DNA of 64,000 bases from Paraphysomonas bandaiensis (taxonomy: Eukaryota > Protista > Chrysophyceae). Made by a program: the position numbers and the translations under genes. The DNA lies in contig CBFFRP010000146.1 in assembly GCA_965644295.1 (NCBI GenBank), positions 496,001 to 560,000 on the forward strand. The letters are read 5' to 3'. Of this stretch, positions 27,387-37,640 are shown piece after piece (position 1 is the stretch's first letter; every line of letters starts with the position of its first letter). The notes under the pieces are model-generated. The model had not been told where the DNA came from. It saw nothing but the letters and a program-made list of their open reading frames with translations, and did no database searches.

Positions 27387-28418
27387 TGTCGATTACTTTA
27401 GTTAGGAAATGTTTGTATCCCATGTAACGTCGTCATCGTTGATATGTAGGTTATAGTTCAATTTAGTTGCGTAATGTTGGATATATATATATATTACCGT
27501 TTTACCATAAGTAATAGATGCTTAAGTTTCGATCTTCTTTTGTCGTTTTAACCGACTGTGATGGTGATGAATGGAAAGTGGCTTCAACTAGATTCAGAAA
27601 CTCGGTTAAGTGGCGCTATGAGTTTGCCGTTGAAGTTTTTTAAAAATGTTTTCTAATGGTAAGTAGTAATTAGTAACTGTTAGTAGTTAATTGAAGGTCG
27701 TTAACTTATGTTCAATAGTAGATCAATGTTCATAAACAATACCTAGAAAATATATTGTCAACAAGTCAAGCAACCTTTACTCCGCTCTTTTGCGTATATA
27801 GTTCATTATTAGACTACAATGTATATATCAATAGTTTATATTCGTTCCCACAATACATAATACAATAGCAATATATTGTTTCCTTACTCAAATTTACCGG
27901 CACAATGTATCACCACCAGGATTTTACTCTGACTCTGATAAGAAAATTTAGCTTACCGCCCCTTTCCAGGGGAATTCTCGCATAGTCTAGCAAGATCATT
28001 TTAACCCTCCCCCACAAACTAGACTGAAATATATGAGGCTCTCTCGTAATCATGTATGTATGGCGTCAGCATGTGTTGTGTGCATCACTGTATGGCTGTA
28101 TCTCTAGATCTATCTGAATATGCAGCATACGCACATAGATATCAGTGTATTTCAGGGGACATGTATATAGGACGTATACGTTGGTATACTGCTGTATATC
28201 CTGCTCCAAGAGAGTTCTATTTTATGTGGACCGTATAACTGGAATACCATGGAATACCCTACACAAATACAGCCTGGTGTCTTCGTGGCCAGATATCCAA
28301 CACACTGTGTGCATGTTAGGTATGGTAGACACAGAGATGGCGTTGTTAAGGAACAGCATCGTGTGTTGTCGTTCATATGAAGTAATGTGGAGCTAATGTG
28401 TCCTCCTAGACTCCCTTT

Positions 28419-31400
28419 ATGATGGAAAGTGGGAAAGAGGACACATTGCATGGTGTCAAGGAAGTATCGCCTGATACAATCAGCACGTGGTTTTATGAGG
28501 GAAATAGATGCGTACTGCCTCTATTGGAGAGAAAATCGTTACTTATATTTTCTTTGGATGGATGCATTCGATCAGCGTGTATTGAATTAATGCTGAACCG
28601 ATGGTTCGATCGCTCAATTCTTTCTGCTATATGTGCAAATGCTGTTTTTCTTGCCTTAGATGACCCACTTTCTGATAACTTCGATGAGGTATTAATGTCT
28701 GTATAAGGTTAACGATATATTTAATTTTTGTATAGCTTTTCTCAGTTGCAGAGGTTGTGTTTAACAGCTTCTTCCTACTGGAATTTTGCATCAAAATCGT
28801 TGCGTTGGGTGCATGGGGAGGACCATCAGGTTACTTTAGAGATCCATGGAATAGGCTAGACTTCGCAGTGCTACTCTTGGGATGGATGTCGTGGACAATG
28901 GATTTTTTATCCACAGCTGAAGTCGGTAACTATTCTTTCATAAGAGCATTGCGGATTTTGAAGGTGACACAACGCAATACGATGACGTTGACCGTCATCA
29001 ATTTTGCGCAGGTGCTAAGAACCGTCAATAGTGTTCCCGGTCTGAAAAGACTCGTAAGAGCTATACTGGATGTCATTCCCCGACTGGTGGGCACGGGATA
29101 TTTATTACTCTTTATTATATTTCTTTTCGGTGAGCTTTCCACTCTAGTGTCTTGTACAGGACAATTTCTCTCCACAGATCAGCATTGTTTCAAAAATACA
29201 TTAACTTTTAACTCATGTCTATATTACTTACTTGGTGCGTGTAGGAATTATCGGTACACAAACCTACATGGGTTTACTTCGAAATCGTTGCTTTCCTGAT
29301 GACGTAAGGAACTCATACGGGTGAGTTGTCTTGCTGTGGTGTGGAATTTTTGCATCATTTGTGTGGAATAAAGGATGCACTATGACGCTGAGGACAAACT
29401 TTGCTCGTTAGAGAGTGGGAGAGGGAGGCAGTGTCACGGCGACACACCTAAATGCTCTCTTACCTACCCAGGTAGGCTCATGTCTGTGCTGGTATGTGTG
29501 CATTGGTTAAACTGCTCTCCCACTGTAGGTACAAATGACGCCAACCCAAACATACACCGCTTCGAGCACTTCGACAACATACTCAACGCTATGTTGTCTC
29601 TGCTTGTCACACTATCTCTTGAAGGTGTGCATTTAGCATTCTTTGCACTTTAGAATCATTTATATTGAGTATAACTAACAGGATGGACGGGATTAATGTA
29701 TGGACTGTTTGATAGTTGGGGGGTCTTTTCCGTTACGTACTTTGTAATCGTGATTCTCTTGGGCTCCTATGTAGCCCTCAACCTTTTGATCGCTGTACTT
29801 TACTTGACCTATGTAGAGACAGTAGAGGACAGGGTAGATGATGATATTAACGATGACGATGTAGTTGATAAATCGGAGGTGACTCACAGGAGGAGTCGAA
29901 GTGAATCTATGAATATTTCTGTTGACAACATATCTGGCGATAACACCACTCGTCAGGGACGGAGGGGAAGTGGGGGCTCTTTAATGTCATCTGTTGCTGA
30001 GCACAGTGAGTGGCCTAGTCTTGTTCAATATCTACATGATTTCGGAATCACTTGTCACTCCTTGTACAGTTTCCTCCAGCACAATCCCAAATATATGAAA
30101 ATGCGAGATATTCTTACTGGTGTGGTAAACAGTGGATCGTTTAACTTGTTCATAGTTTGCGTGATTTTGTTCAATATTCTTGCACTTGCCATTGAAGCTG
30201 ACTCATCGGCGAATGAAGTTCATTATTTTCTCTACATTTCGAATATAGTTTGTACTGCAATATTTACAATGGAACTCGTCGTGCGCACTGTCGCTGCCAA
30301 TATCCCGACTTTTCTCTATGAAAAGTTTAACCTATTAGACACAGCCATTGTTGCAATTAGCATAGCTGAATTAGCTTTGAAAACAAACTCTATTGTGTCC
30401 CTGCTTCGAGCCTTACGTGCACTGCGAACCTTCAAACTTCTCAACCGTTGGAAATCTCTCCAACTTCTCGTCAATGCTGTTTTAAGGTCTGGTCCTGGAC
30501 TGGGATACTTTGCTATAATTCTTGTGCTATTTATATTTGTATTTGCGCTGGCTGGGCGCTCAATTTTTGCTGGAAAACTTGACGATCCAGAGTTTCAATA
30601 TGGAACACCTCGAGCTAATTTCGATACTTTTTTTGATTCCTGCCTAACTACATTCCAGATGGTAACGGGGAAAAGCTGGAATGACATTCTATTTCGGTCT
30701 ATGGAGTACAATCCGGTGGTTGGATGTACATTTATGGTCATACTGTATATTGCGGGGAACGTGATACTACTGAAGCTATTTCTTGCCATTTTATTGGAAA
30801 ACTTCAGTGAAGGGAGGTTCAAAACGGGGAAAACGTCGTACTATGACTACCTTGAACACGATGCGGATATGGAGGTTATGCAATCAGGTCTATATACTTC
30901 GGTAGTTGTACTGATAACCGGATGCACACAGCGTATGTGGCGCTCTTGCAGCGACAGAGGTCGTAATTTTCTCCCCGAGACTTGGTCCCCGTATGGTATT
31001 GACGACGAGAGTGACGATGATACGCCCACTCCCCTAGATAATGATAGTGATGGGAAACCAATAAATTTCATGTGCTCACGAGATTTATCATCAATAAAGG
31101 AGCTACTGATGGATCTACCTGTCGCTGACCATTATCGTGGCAAAAGGGTTTTTATTGATTGTTTTACCGGTGCCGAGCTACTAGGTTATTTGGTTGCAAG
31201 AGGGGCTGCTCTGACTTCTGATATAGCCTTGGAACTGGCTGGAGAGATACTTGAAGATCAGCTAATATCTCCTGTATATATGATGGAGGATGATGTGGAT
31301 ATATTTCGCGACGATAAAGTCCTACATAGTGGTGCCCGCTCTTTTCGCGAAAGTAATTCATGGAAATATACTGCCGACATGAATTTTGAGTTCCGAGGTG

Positions 31401-34252
31401 ACCAGAGTTTGTATCGCCTGAATGGTCAGTCGGAGCAGGTTTCTGAGTGGCTTCTTTTGTCAAAGGATGCTGAATATAAAATCAGTCAGATTAAGAACAA
31501 AGAGAAGCGCCGGCAAATGCGGCGTTTCTTAGCTGGTCATGCCTGTGGTATACTCGGACCAAACAACAAACTGAGAATTATATGCGCTGAGATTGTGTTA
31601 CATAAATGGTTTGAATGCGCAATAATATGTTTGATAGTGGCCAGCAGTATTCTACTGGCTGTAGACAATCCTGCCGCTCCACGAGGGACAACCATATCTC
31701 TCACGTTGTACTATGCAGATATCGGATTCACATTGGCGTTCTCGGTTGAGATGATTATCAAAATGATAGCTATGGGGATCATGTATACACCAAACGCATA
31801 TTTTACCAGCTCGTGGAATATTCTAGATTTTACTATAGTAGTGGTATCTATTCTCTCGTTGTCATTGTCATCCTTGGACCTTTCTTTTCTTAAATCGCTG
31901 AGGGCGGTTCGAGCAGTTCGACCTCTTAGGCTATTATCTCGCGCACCTGGAATGCGGGTAGCTATCAACGCTATAGTAATGGTTATTCCGTCTCTTCTTA
32001 ATTTTTGTTCTGTCGTGAGTGTATTTCTTCTAACATTTGCGATACTTGGCTCTTCTCTTTTCAAAAATAAACTAAACTATTGTCACGCTACTGGAAGTTG
32101 GCCTTCAGAAGATAACAGTAGTTATGAGGACGAATACCGTTACATGTTAGACAAAGAGGAATGCCACGGTAGCGTGACCAACTCAGGGGGGTACACTGCA
32201 AACTTATCTTGGATCCCTGCAGACTCGAATTTCGACACTATTGGCAATGCTCTCATAACACTATTTGAGCTCACCACAATGGAAAATTGGAATCGCATTA
32301 TGTATCCAACTTTAGACATACCTAGTTCGTCGAATGCGGCCCCTGTGATGGATCACTCAAAGTACAATGCGCTTTTCTTTGTGTGCTTCATCATTGTCGG
32401 TGCATTTTTTATTGGCAACCTCTTTGTAGGGATCATAGTACACAAGTTTGAAAAGGCACGGGTACTAGACAAAAGGAGTGTGTTTATGACTGACGAGCAA
32501 TCTAACTGGCTAAACGGAATGAAAGTTGTCCTTGCGGCCCGACCACAGAAGACCTCTCCGATTCCGTCTGAGACCAACCTTTGGGGTATCCAAAGGTCTA
32601 TTTACATGATTGTATGTAACCCTTATTTCTGTGGGACTATAGACGCAGTCATCGTGCTAAATATGCTTGTGATGTCGTTGTATCACTTCGGACAGTCGAA
32701 CCACTTTTCGTCGTTTTTGTTTGCATGTGAAGTTTTATTTGTCAATGTATATGGCGTGGAGCTCATATTGAGGTACATTGCACTCAACGACATGTACGCA
32801 TTTTGGAAGGCTCCCTGGAATATATTTGATATTGTCATATTAGTGGGTGGTGTTTTGGATATATCAGGAACGAGTAGGGGCGTAAATATCACAGTACTCA
32901 GGGTTCTCCGATGTGGGCGCCTTCTCAAGCTCATTCGACGCTCGAAGCACATATACGTACCTCTCAAGACACTGTTCTATTCACTTCCGGCCCTTTTTAA
33001 CATCGGCTCTTTGCTCCTCCTAGCATTTTTTATATTTGCTGTTGTAGGGGTGAACTTGTTTCATGACGCCGATCGTGATGGAATATGGCTCACACAGTAT
33101 AATAACTTTGAGAACTTCGGTTCTGCTATGGTTCTTCTTTTTCGTTGCCTGACAAACGAGAATTGGAATAGTATTATGCATGTTTATGTGCGTCAGGGTT
33201 TCTCTTTTGCACCGCCTTTTTTTGCTGGATTTTTACTGTGCTGTAACTTTACCATGGTAAACCTTTTCATTGCCGTTATCCTTGAAAACTTTGAAACTGC
33301 CCTAAATGGGGAGCGCAAGGTACAGGTGCAGAGCACGGAAATGTTTGTAGATGCTTGGGCCGCGATTAACGACGAATTGCTCGGATCAGACACCGATACA
33401 CTGCCTGCGTATGCCCTTGTAAAGTTATTACACATGTTGCCTTATCCGTTAGGAATACTTGGGACATCAGAGGCTGATCTATCCTTAGGAAATCCAACAG
33501 ATCGTGTACTTTATCGCGCTTTTATTATATCTCTTCTTCGATCGCTTAACTTAAAGGTTGACTCCTCAAATCGTGTGTATTTCGTAGATGCTATATCCGC
33601 AATAAGTCAGCGGGCGAATGAAGAGAGCTCAGAAACCATTTTTGAAAATATGTCTTCTCATCAACGATTGGAGCTATTGTATAATATGAGGAAGCACTGT
33701 CACAACAAGACGATGACCAAAGTAGAGACAAAGTGCAAAGGACAGGTGTTTACAGCGATTGACTTGACAACTGAATTTAATTGTGCCGCAACCATACAAG
33801 CCGTATGGCGTGGTGCTCTGCTTCGGAAGCGAATCAGGGACTATAAAACAGATGACACTTCTGCACTTGCTGACGGAGTACAGAACAAGCAAAATGCCGA
33901 CAGGAGTTCTCCAGTTGTCGCCATGCAAGCGATTAAAACACCCCGAATGCTAGTTAAAAGTACATTGACTCGAGTGTTCCGACATCCATCGAATTCGCAA
34001 AGTTCAGGCGACGAGGGCTGTACCAATAATGCCCTCCCAGAAGTCTGCTCTCCGAAGTCAAATGGATGGAAAAAAGTATTTTTCCCATTAGATAAACCAA
34101 ATGCGGGAACTATGAGGGAGGCAAGCCCAGTGTTCTGGCCCCTTCCTTCTGGAGGCGCAGAGTTGGAAATGGTCCAACCTTCTGTTGATGATGATGGCAT
34201 AGGTGTAGAAACTAGGGCCACAACTATTTTCAACAGCGCTAGAGTGATATAA
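28419..34252 (+). CDS. Four-domain voltage-gated cation channel (Nav/Cav-like) with a DEP insertion and an IQ motif
   Basis: Four S1-S6 repeats with basic S4 helices (IRALRILK|VLRT, LRALRALRTFK, LRAVRAVRPLR, LRVLRCGRLLK). Pore loops are SLEGW, TGKSW, TMENW and TNENW. Also NLFIAVILENF and the IQ motif IQAVWRGALLRK. Domain I is split by several short introns. Confidence 0.93.
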
Positions 34253-34470
34253 AATTATCGACATGTTTTTCTGATGATTCTATAATAGACGTGTACCATG
34301 AGAATATTTTATCTTTGATCAATGCAATATTCCAGTTCTATATAAAGTTCCGTAATTTCTATTAAGTGAAATTTCAGTGTCACGATACAGATTAATATAA
34401 AAAGAATAGTCAATGACACTTTGACCTGAGGTACGCTGAAAATAATATTTAAGTGGCCTATTTGTGAGTA

Positions 34471-35312: not shown

Positions 35313-37640
35313 CTAAAATTCAGCGCTTCCTTGTGTTCTTGGGAACGATATAACGTCTCTTATGTTCTCAAGCCCTGTAATAAACATTAGCAATCTCTCG
35401 AATCCGAGCCCAAACCCTGCATGTGGGACTGTGCCAAACCGCCTGAGATCCATGTACCAATTCATTTCGTGTGGTTTTAATCCACATTCAATACATCGGT
35501 CCGTTAACACATCCAGTCGCTCCTCTCTAACGAGGTCTATTATTTCAGATACTACAATAGATAAAACGCACCTTTGTGAGCCACCAATTATCTCGCCAAT
35601 CTTCGGCACCAGGATGTCCATAGCAGCAACCGTCTTATTGTCGTCATTGAGACGCATATAAAATGCCTTTATCCCTTTAGGGTAGTTATATACAACTGTA
35701 GGACGTTGAAACACCTATAACTCCTTCATGATATACTCTCATTCCTAATTTTTACATAACTTACTTTTTCGGATAAGTATCTCTCATGTTCAGTGTTGAG
35801 ATCAGCTCCCCATGTAGGAGAGTTAATGAAAGAGGTTTTGCTGTTCAAAGCGGCATCTTGCAACAGATCAATCGCATCACTATAGCTAATACGAACAAAG
35901 TCACTGGCTACTACATTGCCCAGACGCTCACGGAGGCCCTTTTCTCCATGTGGACACTGCTCCTCGAAGTAGGCAAGGTCATCTGCACAATGTTCCAGAG
36001 CATATGAGGTCAGGTACTTAATGAAGTCTTCCTATAAAAACGCAAAAATAAAAAGTCTACATCAGCAATGGTACGATATTTATTGCATATATATTCTCAC
36101 CGCCAACGCCATGTTGTCATGTAGGTTTGCAAATGATATCTCAGGCTCGATCATCCAGAACTCCGCAAGATGCCGAGAGGTGTGTGAGTTCTCGGCACGG
36201 AATGTAGGACCAAAAGTATATACGTCAGATATAGCGCAAGCATGGGTCTCTACATTCAACTGTCCAGAGACTGTGAGCGAGCACCGGCGACCGAAGAAAT
36301 CGTTGCTGTAGTCCACTGTCCCGCTAGGAGTTGTTAAGATGTCGGTCGGCTTGGAGTCATCATGTGGGAGAAGAGTGGTAACTTGAAATTGTTCGCCAGC
36401 ACCCTCGCAGTCCGCAGCAGTTATGAGAGGTGTGTGTACATACACGAACCCGCGCTCGTTGTAGAAGCTATGTACCGCATATGCCATCGCATGTCGGATG
36501 CGAAGAACGGAGGAAAACATTTTTGATCGAGGACGGAGATGTGCCATGTCTCGCAAAAACTCAAGGCTATGTTTCTTCTTGGCCAGTGGATAGAGCTTCC
36601 CCCCAACTTCACCATTTTCACCTCCGTATACAGGTCCAAGAACATCTGCATTCACTACGTGGACCTCGATACTCTGTCCTTTTGCAGGGGACTCAACAAC
36701 TTTCCCTTTAACAGATATCGATGCACCTGCCCCACCACACCCGCGCACCTCATCCATTCCAGTAGAATACTCAGCATCCATCACTAGTTGCAGGCTTTGA
36801 GGGGATGATCCATCGTTAAGCTCAATGAAAAGAAGTTTTCCCTTTTGGGCGGGTCGAACAGTTCGTATCCATCCCTTTATCGTGACCTCTGAGCCGACAC
36901 AGAGGTCTCCTCTGGTTATAATATCCTTCACGCGGCTTCGTCCACGATCCCACTTATACTGCAGGTTGATAGGGGCTGTATATAGTGGCAGAGAGAGGTG
37001 GGACAGGCAAGAATTTATAGAGTCGACACTTACCGGCTGCACTGCACAGCTGTGAGCGGTTAATAGAGGCATACCGGTGCAGCTTCAGACCCTGGAGGCG
37101 GCAATATATTGCAGTGGCACCGCCGCGCATCAGTGCAAGTTGACGGAGATAGCCAGGGGCTGTAATGCGTGTGATTGTAATAATAGCATCTGATCTGGAC
37201 AGCACCACAAACCCCAATACATGTCCATTGATAATACGCAGGTAATACATACATACATACATACATACATACATACATACATACATACATACATACATAC
37301 ATACATACATACATACATACATACATACATACATACATACATACATACATACATACATACATACATACATACATACATACATACATACATACATACATAC
37401 ATACATACATACATACATACATACATACATACATACATACATACATACGACATACATACATACATACATACATACATACATACATACATACATACATACA
37501 TACATACATACATACATACATACATACATACATACATACATACATACATACATACATACATACGACATACATACATACATACATACATACATACATACAT
37601 ACATACCGCAGCATGAGGAAGGAGTTCGGAAGCATGTAGA
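35313..37640 (-). CDS. asnS: Asparaginyl-tRNA synthetase, bacterial/organellar type (5' exon structure uncertain)
   Basis: OB fold ([11 protein letters not shown]...FIELNDGS), [64 protein letters not shown] and [12 protein letters not shown]. Confidence 0.93.
37245..37606. repeat. (ATAC)n / (GTAT)n microsatellite, ~362 bp, ~90 units, two identical interruptions
   Basis: Read directly. The TACGACATAC interruptions have their G at 37449 and 37564. Confidence 0.98.

What the first reader, a model, noticed from the sequence alone, without database searches (positions are those of the whole stretch)
29621..33160. Four-domain voltage-gated channel with an E-K-E-E selectivity filter
Seen filter residues: DI SL-E-GW (GAA 29621-23, across an intron), DII TG-K-SW (AAA 30671-73), DIII TM-E-NW (32282-84) and DIV TN-E-NW (33158-60). 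Known: Cav is EEEE/EEDD, Nav1 is DEKA, and cnidarian DKEA and invertebrate NALCN EKEE isoforms gain Na+ preference from a DII lysine. Unlike NALCN, all four S4 helices here retain regular Arg/Lys spacing. Inference: an independent origin of a Na+-preferring, voltage-gated four-domain channel in a stramenopile-like protist.
Basis: partly seen in the sequence, partly recalled or inferred. Interest (0 to 1): 0.8.

Follow-up and report, generated by a model that had tools for sequence, protein, structure and literature searches.

The report
Diatom voltage-gated channel with E-K-E-E filter
A silica-making marine alga (most likely a diatom) expresses one extra copy of its calcium/sodium-type voltage-gated channel in which a key pore glutamate has become lysine, a change that in animals makes such channels carry sodium; the change is real, but its effect on ion choice is untested.

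Summary
All four filter codons are at the stated coordinates: GAA, AAA, GAA, GAG, giving E/K/E/E. A 5.6-kb spliced transcript-like contig from another strain label confirms the DI intron and five more. The gene has 7 exons (28419-34252, +) and encodes 1818 aa: four domains, charged S4 helices in all four, a Nav-like VFM motif in the III-IV linker and an IQ motif. It resembles Nav/Cav far more than NALCN (E 1e-140 against 1e-44).

The AAA codon is unchanged in three other datasets, so it is not an error. The genome carries at least 7 silicon-transporter loci. It also has three close paralogs, all with Glu in DII. In trees the Lys channel sits inside a 100%-supported clade of Glu-bearing channels, sister to an own-genome paralog. 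No ortholog outside this species complex turned up, and none of about 167 nearest cluster representatives has a DII Lys.

So the Lys arose independently and recently. Other pore positions have changed as well. Sodium preference remains an inference. Lys-bearing filters in protist four-domain channels are already published (PMC5824947), so this is a new variant of a known kind.

The parts
28344..34260 (+). Transcribed region as far as the spliced contig was laid. The contig runs about 65 nt beyond 34260.
   Evidence: X8 record 25, 5605 nt, laid from 28344 to the end of the stretch with six GT..AG joints
28419..28688 (+). Exon 1: start codon, N-terminus, DI S1
   Evidence: Translation; joint 28688/28736 in X8
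28736..28963 (+). Exon 2: DI S2, S3 and the first half of S4
   Evidence: Joints in X8; model rebuilt
29012..29129 (+). Exon 3: second half of DI S4, and S5. Removing the 48-nt in-frame intron restores the R-x-x-R-x-x-K-x-x-R spacing.
29245..29320 (+). Exon 4: DI extracellular turret
29374..29471 (+). Exon 5: DI turret, holding three of its four cysteines
29529..29624 (+). Exon 6: DI pore helix, ending in the filter Glu (GAA 29621-23) plus one base
29682..34252 (+). Exon 7: rest of DI, then DII, the II-III linker, DIII, DIV, the C-terminus and the stop codon
   Evidence: ORF list; Pfam Ion_trans E 2e-157
30671..30673 (+). DII filter codon AAA = Lys626 (motif TGKSW)
   Evidence: unchanged in X3, X8 and X12; aligned to the Cav1.2 DII Glu
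32282..32284 (+). DIII filter Glu (TMENW)
33158..33160 (+). DIV filter Glu (TNENW). The residue before it is Asn, where 149 of 167 relatives have Gly.
30401..30454 (+). DII S4 voltage sensor (R,R,R,K..K)
31889..31942 (+). DIII S4 voltage sensor (K,R,R,R,R)
32897..32947 (+). DIV S4 voltage sensor (R,R,R,K,R,K)
30773..30775 (+). DII S6 codon AAG = Lys660, at the site of the conserved pore-lining Asn (N in 134 of 167 relatives)
32477..32500 (+). III-IV linker motif SVFMTDEQ (paralogs have SVFLTEDQ; Nav1 has DIFMTEEQ)
31133..31327 (+). DEP-like domain in the II-III linker
   Evidence: Pfam PF00610 at 26.5 bits, below the 32.7 cut-off. The same domain lies at the same place in relatives, and in P0008 it scores 41.7 bits, above the cut-off.
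33791..33832 (+). C-terminal IQ-type motif (IQ..RG...R)
   Evidence: Read from the sequence

Best explanation
This is an intact, spliced and expressed gene of a silicifying stramenopile, most likely a diatom. [quoted passage not shown] It is one of four close paralogs in this genome, and the only one in which the DII filter glutamate has become lysine (GAA to AAA), with the neighbouring Asn also changed to Ser. The ring of four acidic residues is thus E/K/E/E. The voltage sensors, the III-IV inactivation-type linker and the IQ motif are kept, so the channel should still open on depolarisation. The inferred consequence is that the lysine, together with the loss of acidic residues in the outer vestibule, removes the high-affinity Ca2+ site. 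The channel would then conduct mainly monovalent cations, which in seawater means an inward Na+ current, while the Glu-bearing paralogs stay Ca2+-permeable. Shown here: the gene structure, its expression, the reality of the Lys, its derived state and the channel's family placement. Inferred: ion selectivity, gating and cellular role.
For: The codons and motifs are at the stated coordinates. Six introns are confirmed by a spliced 5.6-kb contig, and the AAA codon is unchanged in three datasets carrying three organism labels. PDB phmmer gives Nav1.7 and Cav1.1 E about 1e-140 against NALCN 1e-44. The Lys aligns to the Cav1.2 DII Glu. All S4 helices carry regularly spaced charges, and the S2/S3 counter-charges are present. 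The own-genome paralogs C65, C234 and C432 all have Glu in DII. Their codons are GAG/GAA followed by AAT/AAC, against AAA AGC here, which amounts to two transitions. In trees the channel is sister to paralog C432 (UFBoot 100 / SH-aLRT 99), inside a 100/100 clade whose other members do not have Lys in DII. Among about 167 nearest cluster representatives the DII site is E in 124 and D in 33, and the single apparent K was an alignment artefact. Further charge-reducing changes surround the pore: at filter+4 the residues are G/D/R/S, where relatives mostly have D in DI and DIII, and DIV filter-1 is Asn instead of Gly. Within the species complex there are 4 synonymous and 4 conservative non-synonymous differences, giving omega of about 0.3. 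The literature holds that a Lys in DII or DIII is the main determinant of Na+ selectivity in DKEA/DEKA Nav channels and of Na+ permeability in NALCN (PMC6259924; PMC10120453; PMC5824947).
Against: There is no functional measurement. In the papers I read, E/K/E/E has not itself been shown to be Na+-selective in any background (PMC4063719). NALCN with a Lys ring is described there as a poorly selective leak channel that Ca2+ blocks. The conserved DII S6 Asn is also replaced by Lys, which could change or impair gating. No ortholog outside one species complex was found, so long-term conservation of the Lys cannot be demonstrated. The selection estimate rests on only 8 substitutions. Depth from contigs says nothing about expression level or cell type.
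Confidence: 0.55

Rival explanations
1. The channel remains a Ca2+-permeable or broadly non-selective cation channel. The Lys only tunes conductance, divalent block or pH sensitivity, without making Na+ the preferred ion.
For: Three acidic residues remain in the ring. Selectivity in four-domain channels also depends on filter+1 'beacon' residues and on the extracellular turrets (PMC10120453; PMC5824947). NALCN with a Lys ring is described as a poorly selective channel with strong Ca2+ block.
Against: No acidic residue sits at filter+1 in any domain, and the outer vestibule has lost acidic residues. Both features are said to favour Na+ permeation over Ca2+ selectivity.
Confidence: 0.25
2. This is a redundant paralog drifting toward loss of conduction, or reused as a non-conducting voltage sensor. 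The pore changes would then reflect relaxed constraint rather than a new selectivity.
For: It has several rare substitutions at normally conserved pore positions: DII filter Lys, DII S6 Asn to Lys, DIV filter-1 Gly to Asn. There are three other paralogs in the genome, and no orthologs elsewhere.
Against: The 5.4-kb reading frame is intact, with six correctly spliced introns and a full-length transcript-like contig. Its branch is shorter than that of its sister paralog, 0.40 against 0.62. The voltage-sensor charges, S2/S3 counter-charges, III-IV linker and IQ motif are all kept. Omega is about 0.3.
Confidence: 0.13
3. The Lys codon is a sequencing or assembly error, a private allele or an RNA-editing site.
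For: It differs from GAA by one base and lies in a GGGGAAAA run. X3 contigs show many 1-nt deletions elsewhere.
Against: AAA is read in X3, in X8 (the spliced contig) and in X12, under three organism labels, with no alternative letter or indel at 30671-73. The neighbouring codon is changed too.
Confidence: 0.02
4. It is a NALCN/Cch1-type leak channel, the family in which E/K/E/E is already known.
For: The filter letters match those of invertebrate NALCN isoforms.
Against: Similarity to NALCN is far lower than to Nav and Cav, 154 against 472 bits. All four S4 helices are charge-rich, whereas NALCN and Cch1 are charge-poor. DIV filter+1 is Asn, not the Asp found in NALCN. The nearest relatives are stramenopile Cav/Nav-type channels.
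Confidence: 0.01

Closest known systems
Four-domain Cav/Nav homologues of centric diatoms and other stramenopiles (4D-Cav/Nav; PMC6509283, PMC11085791)
   Same: It has the same architecture. Its nearest relatives by sequence are P0001-P0005 at 45-48% identity, and the clade has 100/100 support. The genome context is a silicifier with SIT genes. The DI filter intron position is shared with own-genome paralogs C65 and C234, and the DEP-like insert in the II-III linker is shared with own-genome paralog C65 and with relatives from other sources.
   Different: The published descriptions I read give EEEE-type filters for diatom representatives (PMC6259924). This paralog has Lys in DII, plus rare changes at DII filter+1, DII S6 and DIV filter-1.
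Lys-bearing protist four-domain channels: oomycete D/D/K/D, A/G/K/E and S/S/K/E, Guillardia D/D/K/D(G), Thecamonas D/K/T/D (Pozdnyakov et al. 2018, PMC5824947)
   Same: These are also non-animal, Cav/Nav-type channels with a filter Lys that arose independently. All are proposed, without measurement, as candidate Na+-permeable channels.
   Different: The Lys there is mostly in DIII, and the rings differ. E/K/E/E is not listed, and diatoms are not among the lineages named. Those channels have an acidic residue at filter+1 of DIV or of DI/DIII. This one has none.
Invertebrate NALCN isoforms with an E/K/E/E filter (PMC3557258, PMC4436565)
   Same: The four filter letters are identical.
   Different: NALCN is a different and distant subfamily. 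It has charge-poor S4 helices, an Asp at DIV filter+1, and makes the Lys form by alternative exons. Here there is one intronless DII exon and a separate paralog.
Cnidarian Nav2.5-type channels with D/K/E/A
   Same: The Lys is in DII rather than DIII, and it arose independently of DEKA in a voltage-gated channel.
   Different: Those are animal Nav-clade channels, with Asp in DI, Ala in DIV and a DII filter one residue shorter. Their Na+ selectivity has been measured, according to the reviews read.

Membership tests
[quoted passage not shown] | Four homologous 6-TM repeats (Pfam Ion_trans) in one polypeptide | tested here: met
   Pfam Ion_trans E 2e-157 on the last exon. DI, rebuilt from exons 1-6, aligns with DI of P0001, Cav1.1 and Nav.
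[quoted passage not shown] | Arg/Lys at every third position in S4 of all four domains | tested here: met
   4 to 6 charges per S4
[quoted passage not shown] | P-loop filter residue followed by a conserved Trp in each domain | tested here: met
   Motifs LEGW, GKSW, MENW and NENW align with the filter columns of solved Cav and Nav structures
[quoted passage not shown] | Voltage-dependent gating and cation conduction | not testable with these tools
   Needs electrophysiology
NALCN/Cch1 | Charge-poor S4 segments | tested here: not met
   All four S4 helices are charge-rich; criterion taken from PMC5824947
NALCN/Cch1 | Closest sequence kinship to NALCN/Cch1 | tested here: not met
   154 bits to NALCN against 472 bits to Nav1.7 and 457 bits to Cav1.1. 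No NALCN sequence was available to put in the tree.
NALCN/Cch1 | Asp at DIV filter+1 | tested here: not met
   DIV reads NENW; criterion from PMC10120453
Animal Nav1 | DEKA or DKEA ring with a DII filter one residue shorter (GEW) | tested here: not met
   The ring is E/K/E/E and DII keeps the extra residue, GKSW
Animal Nav1 | Placement in the Nav clade | tested here: not met
   The Nav sequences P0075 and P0099 form their own 100/100 clade, away from the query
Animal high-voltage-activated Cav1/Cav2 | EEEE ring with Asp at DII filter+1, and GPHH/Ca_chan_IQ C-terminal domains | tested here: not met
   The ring is EKEE and DII filter+1 is Ser. Pfam finds no PF16905 or PF08763. Only a bare IQ-type motif is present.

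The most novel reading that the evidence does not exclude
[quoted passage not shown] It would have arisen by a recent Glu-to-Lys change in one paralog of a diatom, and would supply the fast Na+ component of diatom action potentials, or act as a sperm or vegetative excitability channel, alongside Ca2+-permeable sister paralogs.
Probability: 0.25. Interest if true: 0.8.

Novelty: new variant of a known kind. Interest (0 to 1): 0.5.

Why it matters
Sodium-selective four-domain channels have so far been demonstrated only in animals (PMC5824947). How often, and by what route, sodium selectivity evolves from a calcium-type pore remains an open question.

This case offers a natural, very recent experiment in a single genome. 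One Lys-bearing paralog sits next to three Glu-bearing ones, so wild-type and swap mutants can be compared directly.

Diatoms fire fast Na+/Ca2+ action potentials whose molecular basis is only partly known (PMC6509283). A Na+-conducting four-domain channel would add a candidate. If the current turns out to be Ca2+-selective or absent, the case would instead show that a filter Lys alone does not predict selectivity. That would caution against the common practice of calling channels from their filter letters.

Tried and rejected
1. My first splice model used the acceptor at 28753 for intron 1. The spliced contig shows the intron ends at 28735, which adds six residues.

2. I looked for orthologs of the Lys channel outside its species complex and found none.
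- The word-based search gave a best hit of 48% identity, and those hits proved to be orthologs of the other paralogs. P0001 is 98% identical to own-genome contig C65.
- The exhaustive HMMER search of 1.84 billion representatives gave a best hit of 54%, a fragment that falls in the other subclade.
- The metagenome contig scan found only a 23% relative.

3. A second apparent EKEE protein, P0240, was an alignment artefact. It is N-terminally truncated, and its true DII filter reads SENW.

4. I did not find the DI filter of paralog C432, so its full ring is not stated.

5. No NALCN or Cch1 sequence was available for the tree, so their exclusion rests on score differences and motif criteria.

6. 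No structure was predicted. The full spliced protein exceeds the size limit and has no single reference, and a three-domain fragment would not form the pore.

7. Rfam found nothing in the window.

Full report
**Observation**

They are GAA 29621-23, AAA 30671-73, GAA 32282-84 and GAG 33158-60. They sit in the motifs SLE|GW, TGKSW, TMENW and TNENW.

The last exon is a 1518-codon open frame, 29696-34252. Upstream I assembled six more exons from GT..AG boundaries.

One 5605-nt contig of run X8 skips six introns of 47, 48, 115, 53, 57 and 57 nt, all GT..AG. One of them splits the DI filter codon from the following Gly-Trp.

That contig corrected my acceptor for intron 1. The final model has these exons:
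- 28419-28688
- 28736-28963
- 29012-29129
- 29245-29320
- 29374-29471
- 29529-29624
- 29682-34252

It encodes 1818 aa with no internal stop.

**Is the Lys real?**

No alternative base or indel is reported at 30671-73 in three datasets:
- X3: organism label A, a sample other than the probable source.
- X8: label B, the spliced contig.
- X12: label D.

X11 (label C) does not cover the site. X3 shows many single-base deletions elsewhere that the other runs do not share. I take these for errors of that dataset.

Between labels there are 4 synonymous and 4 conservative non-synonymous coding differences, a crude omega of about 0.3. These labels are about 99.8% identical here. They confirm the base but say little about long-term conservation.

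**What the protein is**

Pfam finds Ion_trans repeats (E 2e-157) and a sub-threshold DEP match in the II-III linker.

Against solved structures, the best matches are Nav1.7, Cav1.1, Cav1.2 and Cav3 at E about 1e-140 to 1e-126. NALCN reaches only 1e-44. The DII segment aligns best to DII of Cav1.2, with the Lys opposite the filter Glu of tgEdw.

Other features, from sequence and alignment:
- All four S4 helices carry Arg/Lys at every third position.
- The S2 and S3 counter-charges are present.
- The III-IV linker is short and reads SVFMTDEQ, close to the DIFMTEEQ of Nav1.
- The C-terminus has an IQ-type motif.

This matches the ancestral determinant set described for protist four-domain channels (PMC5824947).

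**Host and paralogs**

The window's genome is 62.6 Mb. It has at least seven silicon-transporter loci above the Pfam cut-off. I therefore read it as a silicifying stramenopile, most likely a diatom. I did not establish the species.

The genome holds three close paralogs, on contigs C65, C234 and C432, and a distant one on C258. All three close paralogs have Glu in DII.

| Gene | DII motif | Filter and next codon |
|---|---|---|
| This channel | TGKSW | AAA AGC |
| C65 | SGENW | GAG AAT |
| C234 | SGENW | GAA AAT |
| C432 | TAENW | GAA AAC |

Two transitions separate this gene from its sister C432 at these two codons.

**Phylogeny and census**

The top database hits, P0001-P0005 at 45-48% identity, are orthologs of the C65/C234 type. 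P0001 is 98% identical to C65.

I built trees of the DIII-DIV region, first a quick one and then a careful one (IQ-TREE, LG+G4). Both give the same picture:
- The Lys channel is sister to C432 (UFBoot 100 / SH-aLRT 99).
- That pair lies inside a 12-member clade with 100/100 support.
- In every other member whose DII is present, that site is not Lys: it is Glu in most, Asp in P0005 and Ser in P0122.
- The Lys channel's terminal branch (0.40) is shorter than its sister's (0.62).

An exhaustive HMMER search of 1.84 billion cluster representatives found nothing closer than a 54% fragment, and that fragment belongs to the other subclade. A scan of metagenome contigs found no close relative.

In an alignment of the 167 nearest representatives and references, the DII filter site is Glu in 124 and Asp in 33. 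The one other apparent Lys, P0240, is an artefact of a truncated sequence.

The Lys is therefore a derived, lineage-restricted state that arose independently of NALCN, Nav1 and the cnidarian DKEA channels.

**Other pore changes**

Compared with the same 167 sequences:
- DIV filter-1 is Asn, where Gly occurs in 149.
- DII filter+1 is Ser, where Asn or Asp is usual.
- The filter+4 positions read G/D/R/S. Asp is commonest in DI (89) and DIII (64).
- The conserved pore-lining Asn of DII S6, found in 134, is Lys here (AAG, 30773-75).

The net effect is fewer negative and more positive charges around the pore. That fits a move away from Ca2+ binding. It could equally reflect relaxed constraint or altered gating.

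**Mechanism**

The literature I read holds that a Lys in DII or DIII of the filter is the main determinant of Na+ selectivity in Nav1 (DEKA, DKEA) and of Na+ permeability in NALCN. It also holds that an Asp at filter+1 of DII or DIV favours Ca2+ selectivity or Ca2+ block (PMC6259924; PMC10120453; PMC4436565). This channel has the Lys and has no filter+1 Asp.

I therefore consider a voltage-gated, mainly Na+-carrying (monovalent) current in seawater the most likely function, at about 0.55.

The caveats are real:
- In the papers read, the E/K/E/E ring itself was expected rather than measured to be Na+-selective (PMC4063719).
- The S6 Lys may disturb gating.
- No current has been recorded.

**Comparison and novelty**

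Lys-bearing filters in non-animal four-domain channels are already on record as candidate sodium channels: oomycete D/D/K/D, A/G/K/E and S/S/K/E, Guillardia, and Thecamonas D/K/T/D (PMC5824947). A review also mentions DDKD-type pores in algae and protists (PMC6259924).

I found no paper that links E/K/E/E to diatom or other non-NALCN channels. Diatom four-domain channels are known but uncharacterised (PMC6509283; PMC11085791).

I file this as a new variant of a known kind. It is worth a bench test because the Glu-bearing paralogs in the same genome provide ready controls.

**Earlier findings**

My scans agree and add that it is shared by relatives.

Noticed in passing
window 31133-31327: There is a DEP-like domain in the II-III cytoplasmic linker. 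It scores below threshold here (26.5 bits) and in P0001, P0002, P0004 and P0006, but above the Pfam cut-off in P0008 (41.7 bits), always at the same place. It therefore looks like a conserved feature of this stramenopile channel clade. I found no paper linking DEP domains to voltage-gated calcium channels.
   Followed up: partly
window 30773-30775: The near-universal pore-lining Asn of DII S6 is Lys (AAG) in this channel, while it is Asn in 134 of 167 relatives. This is a second unusual Lys in domain II and may alter gating.
   Followed up: partly
window 28689-29681: All six introns lie within domain I, and the remaining 4.6 kb of coding sequence is intronless. The intron that splits the DI filter (after Glu plus one base) is at the same position in paralogs C65 and C234 (47 and 46 nt there).
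   Followed up: partly
window 28377-28421: The 5' leader of the transcript-like contig holds three tiny upstream reading frames (2, 3 and 8 codons). The last one's stop overlaps the main ATG.
   Followed up: no
window 28903, 29718, 30628, 31031, 32186, 33026, 33217, 34070: Run X3 contigs lack one base at each of these places at full depth, while X8, X11 and X12 agree with the window. This is probably homopolymer-type error in that dataset rather than real frameshifts.
   Followed up: no
window 33182-33230 (DIV turret) and the paralogs: The extracellular cysteine pattern is 4-0-2-0. The two DIV cysteines, said to be universal in four-domain channels (PMC4436565), are absent here and in the close relatives.
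   Followed up: no
G000 contigs C65, C234, C432, C258 (loci L013-L016): The genome holds four further four-domain channel genes. C65 and C234 are recent duplicates, 83% identical over DIII-DIV by way of P0001. Relatives P0005 and P0122 have Asp and Ser at the DII filter site, so this position varies within the clade.
   Followed up: partly
window 35313-35714 (- strand): This open frame has a C-terminus typical of a class II aminoacyl-tRNA synthetase (Asn/Asp type).
   Followed up: no
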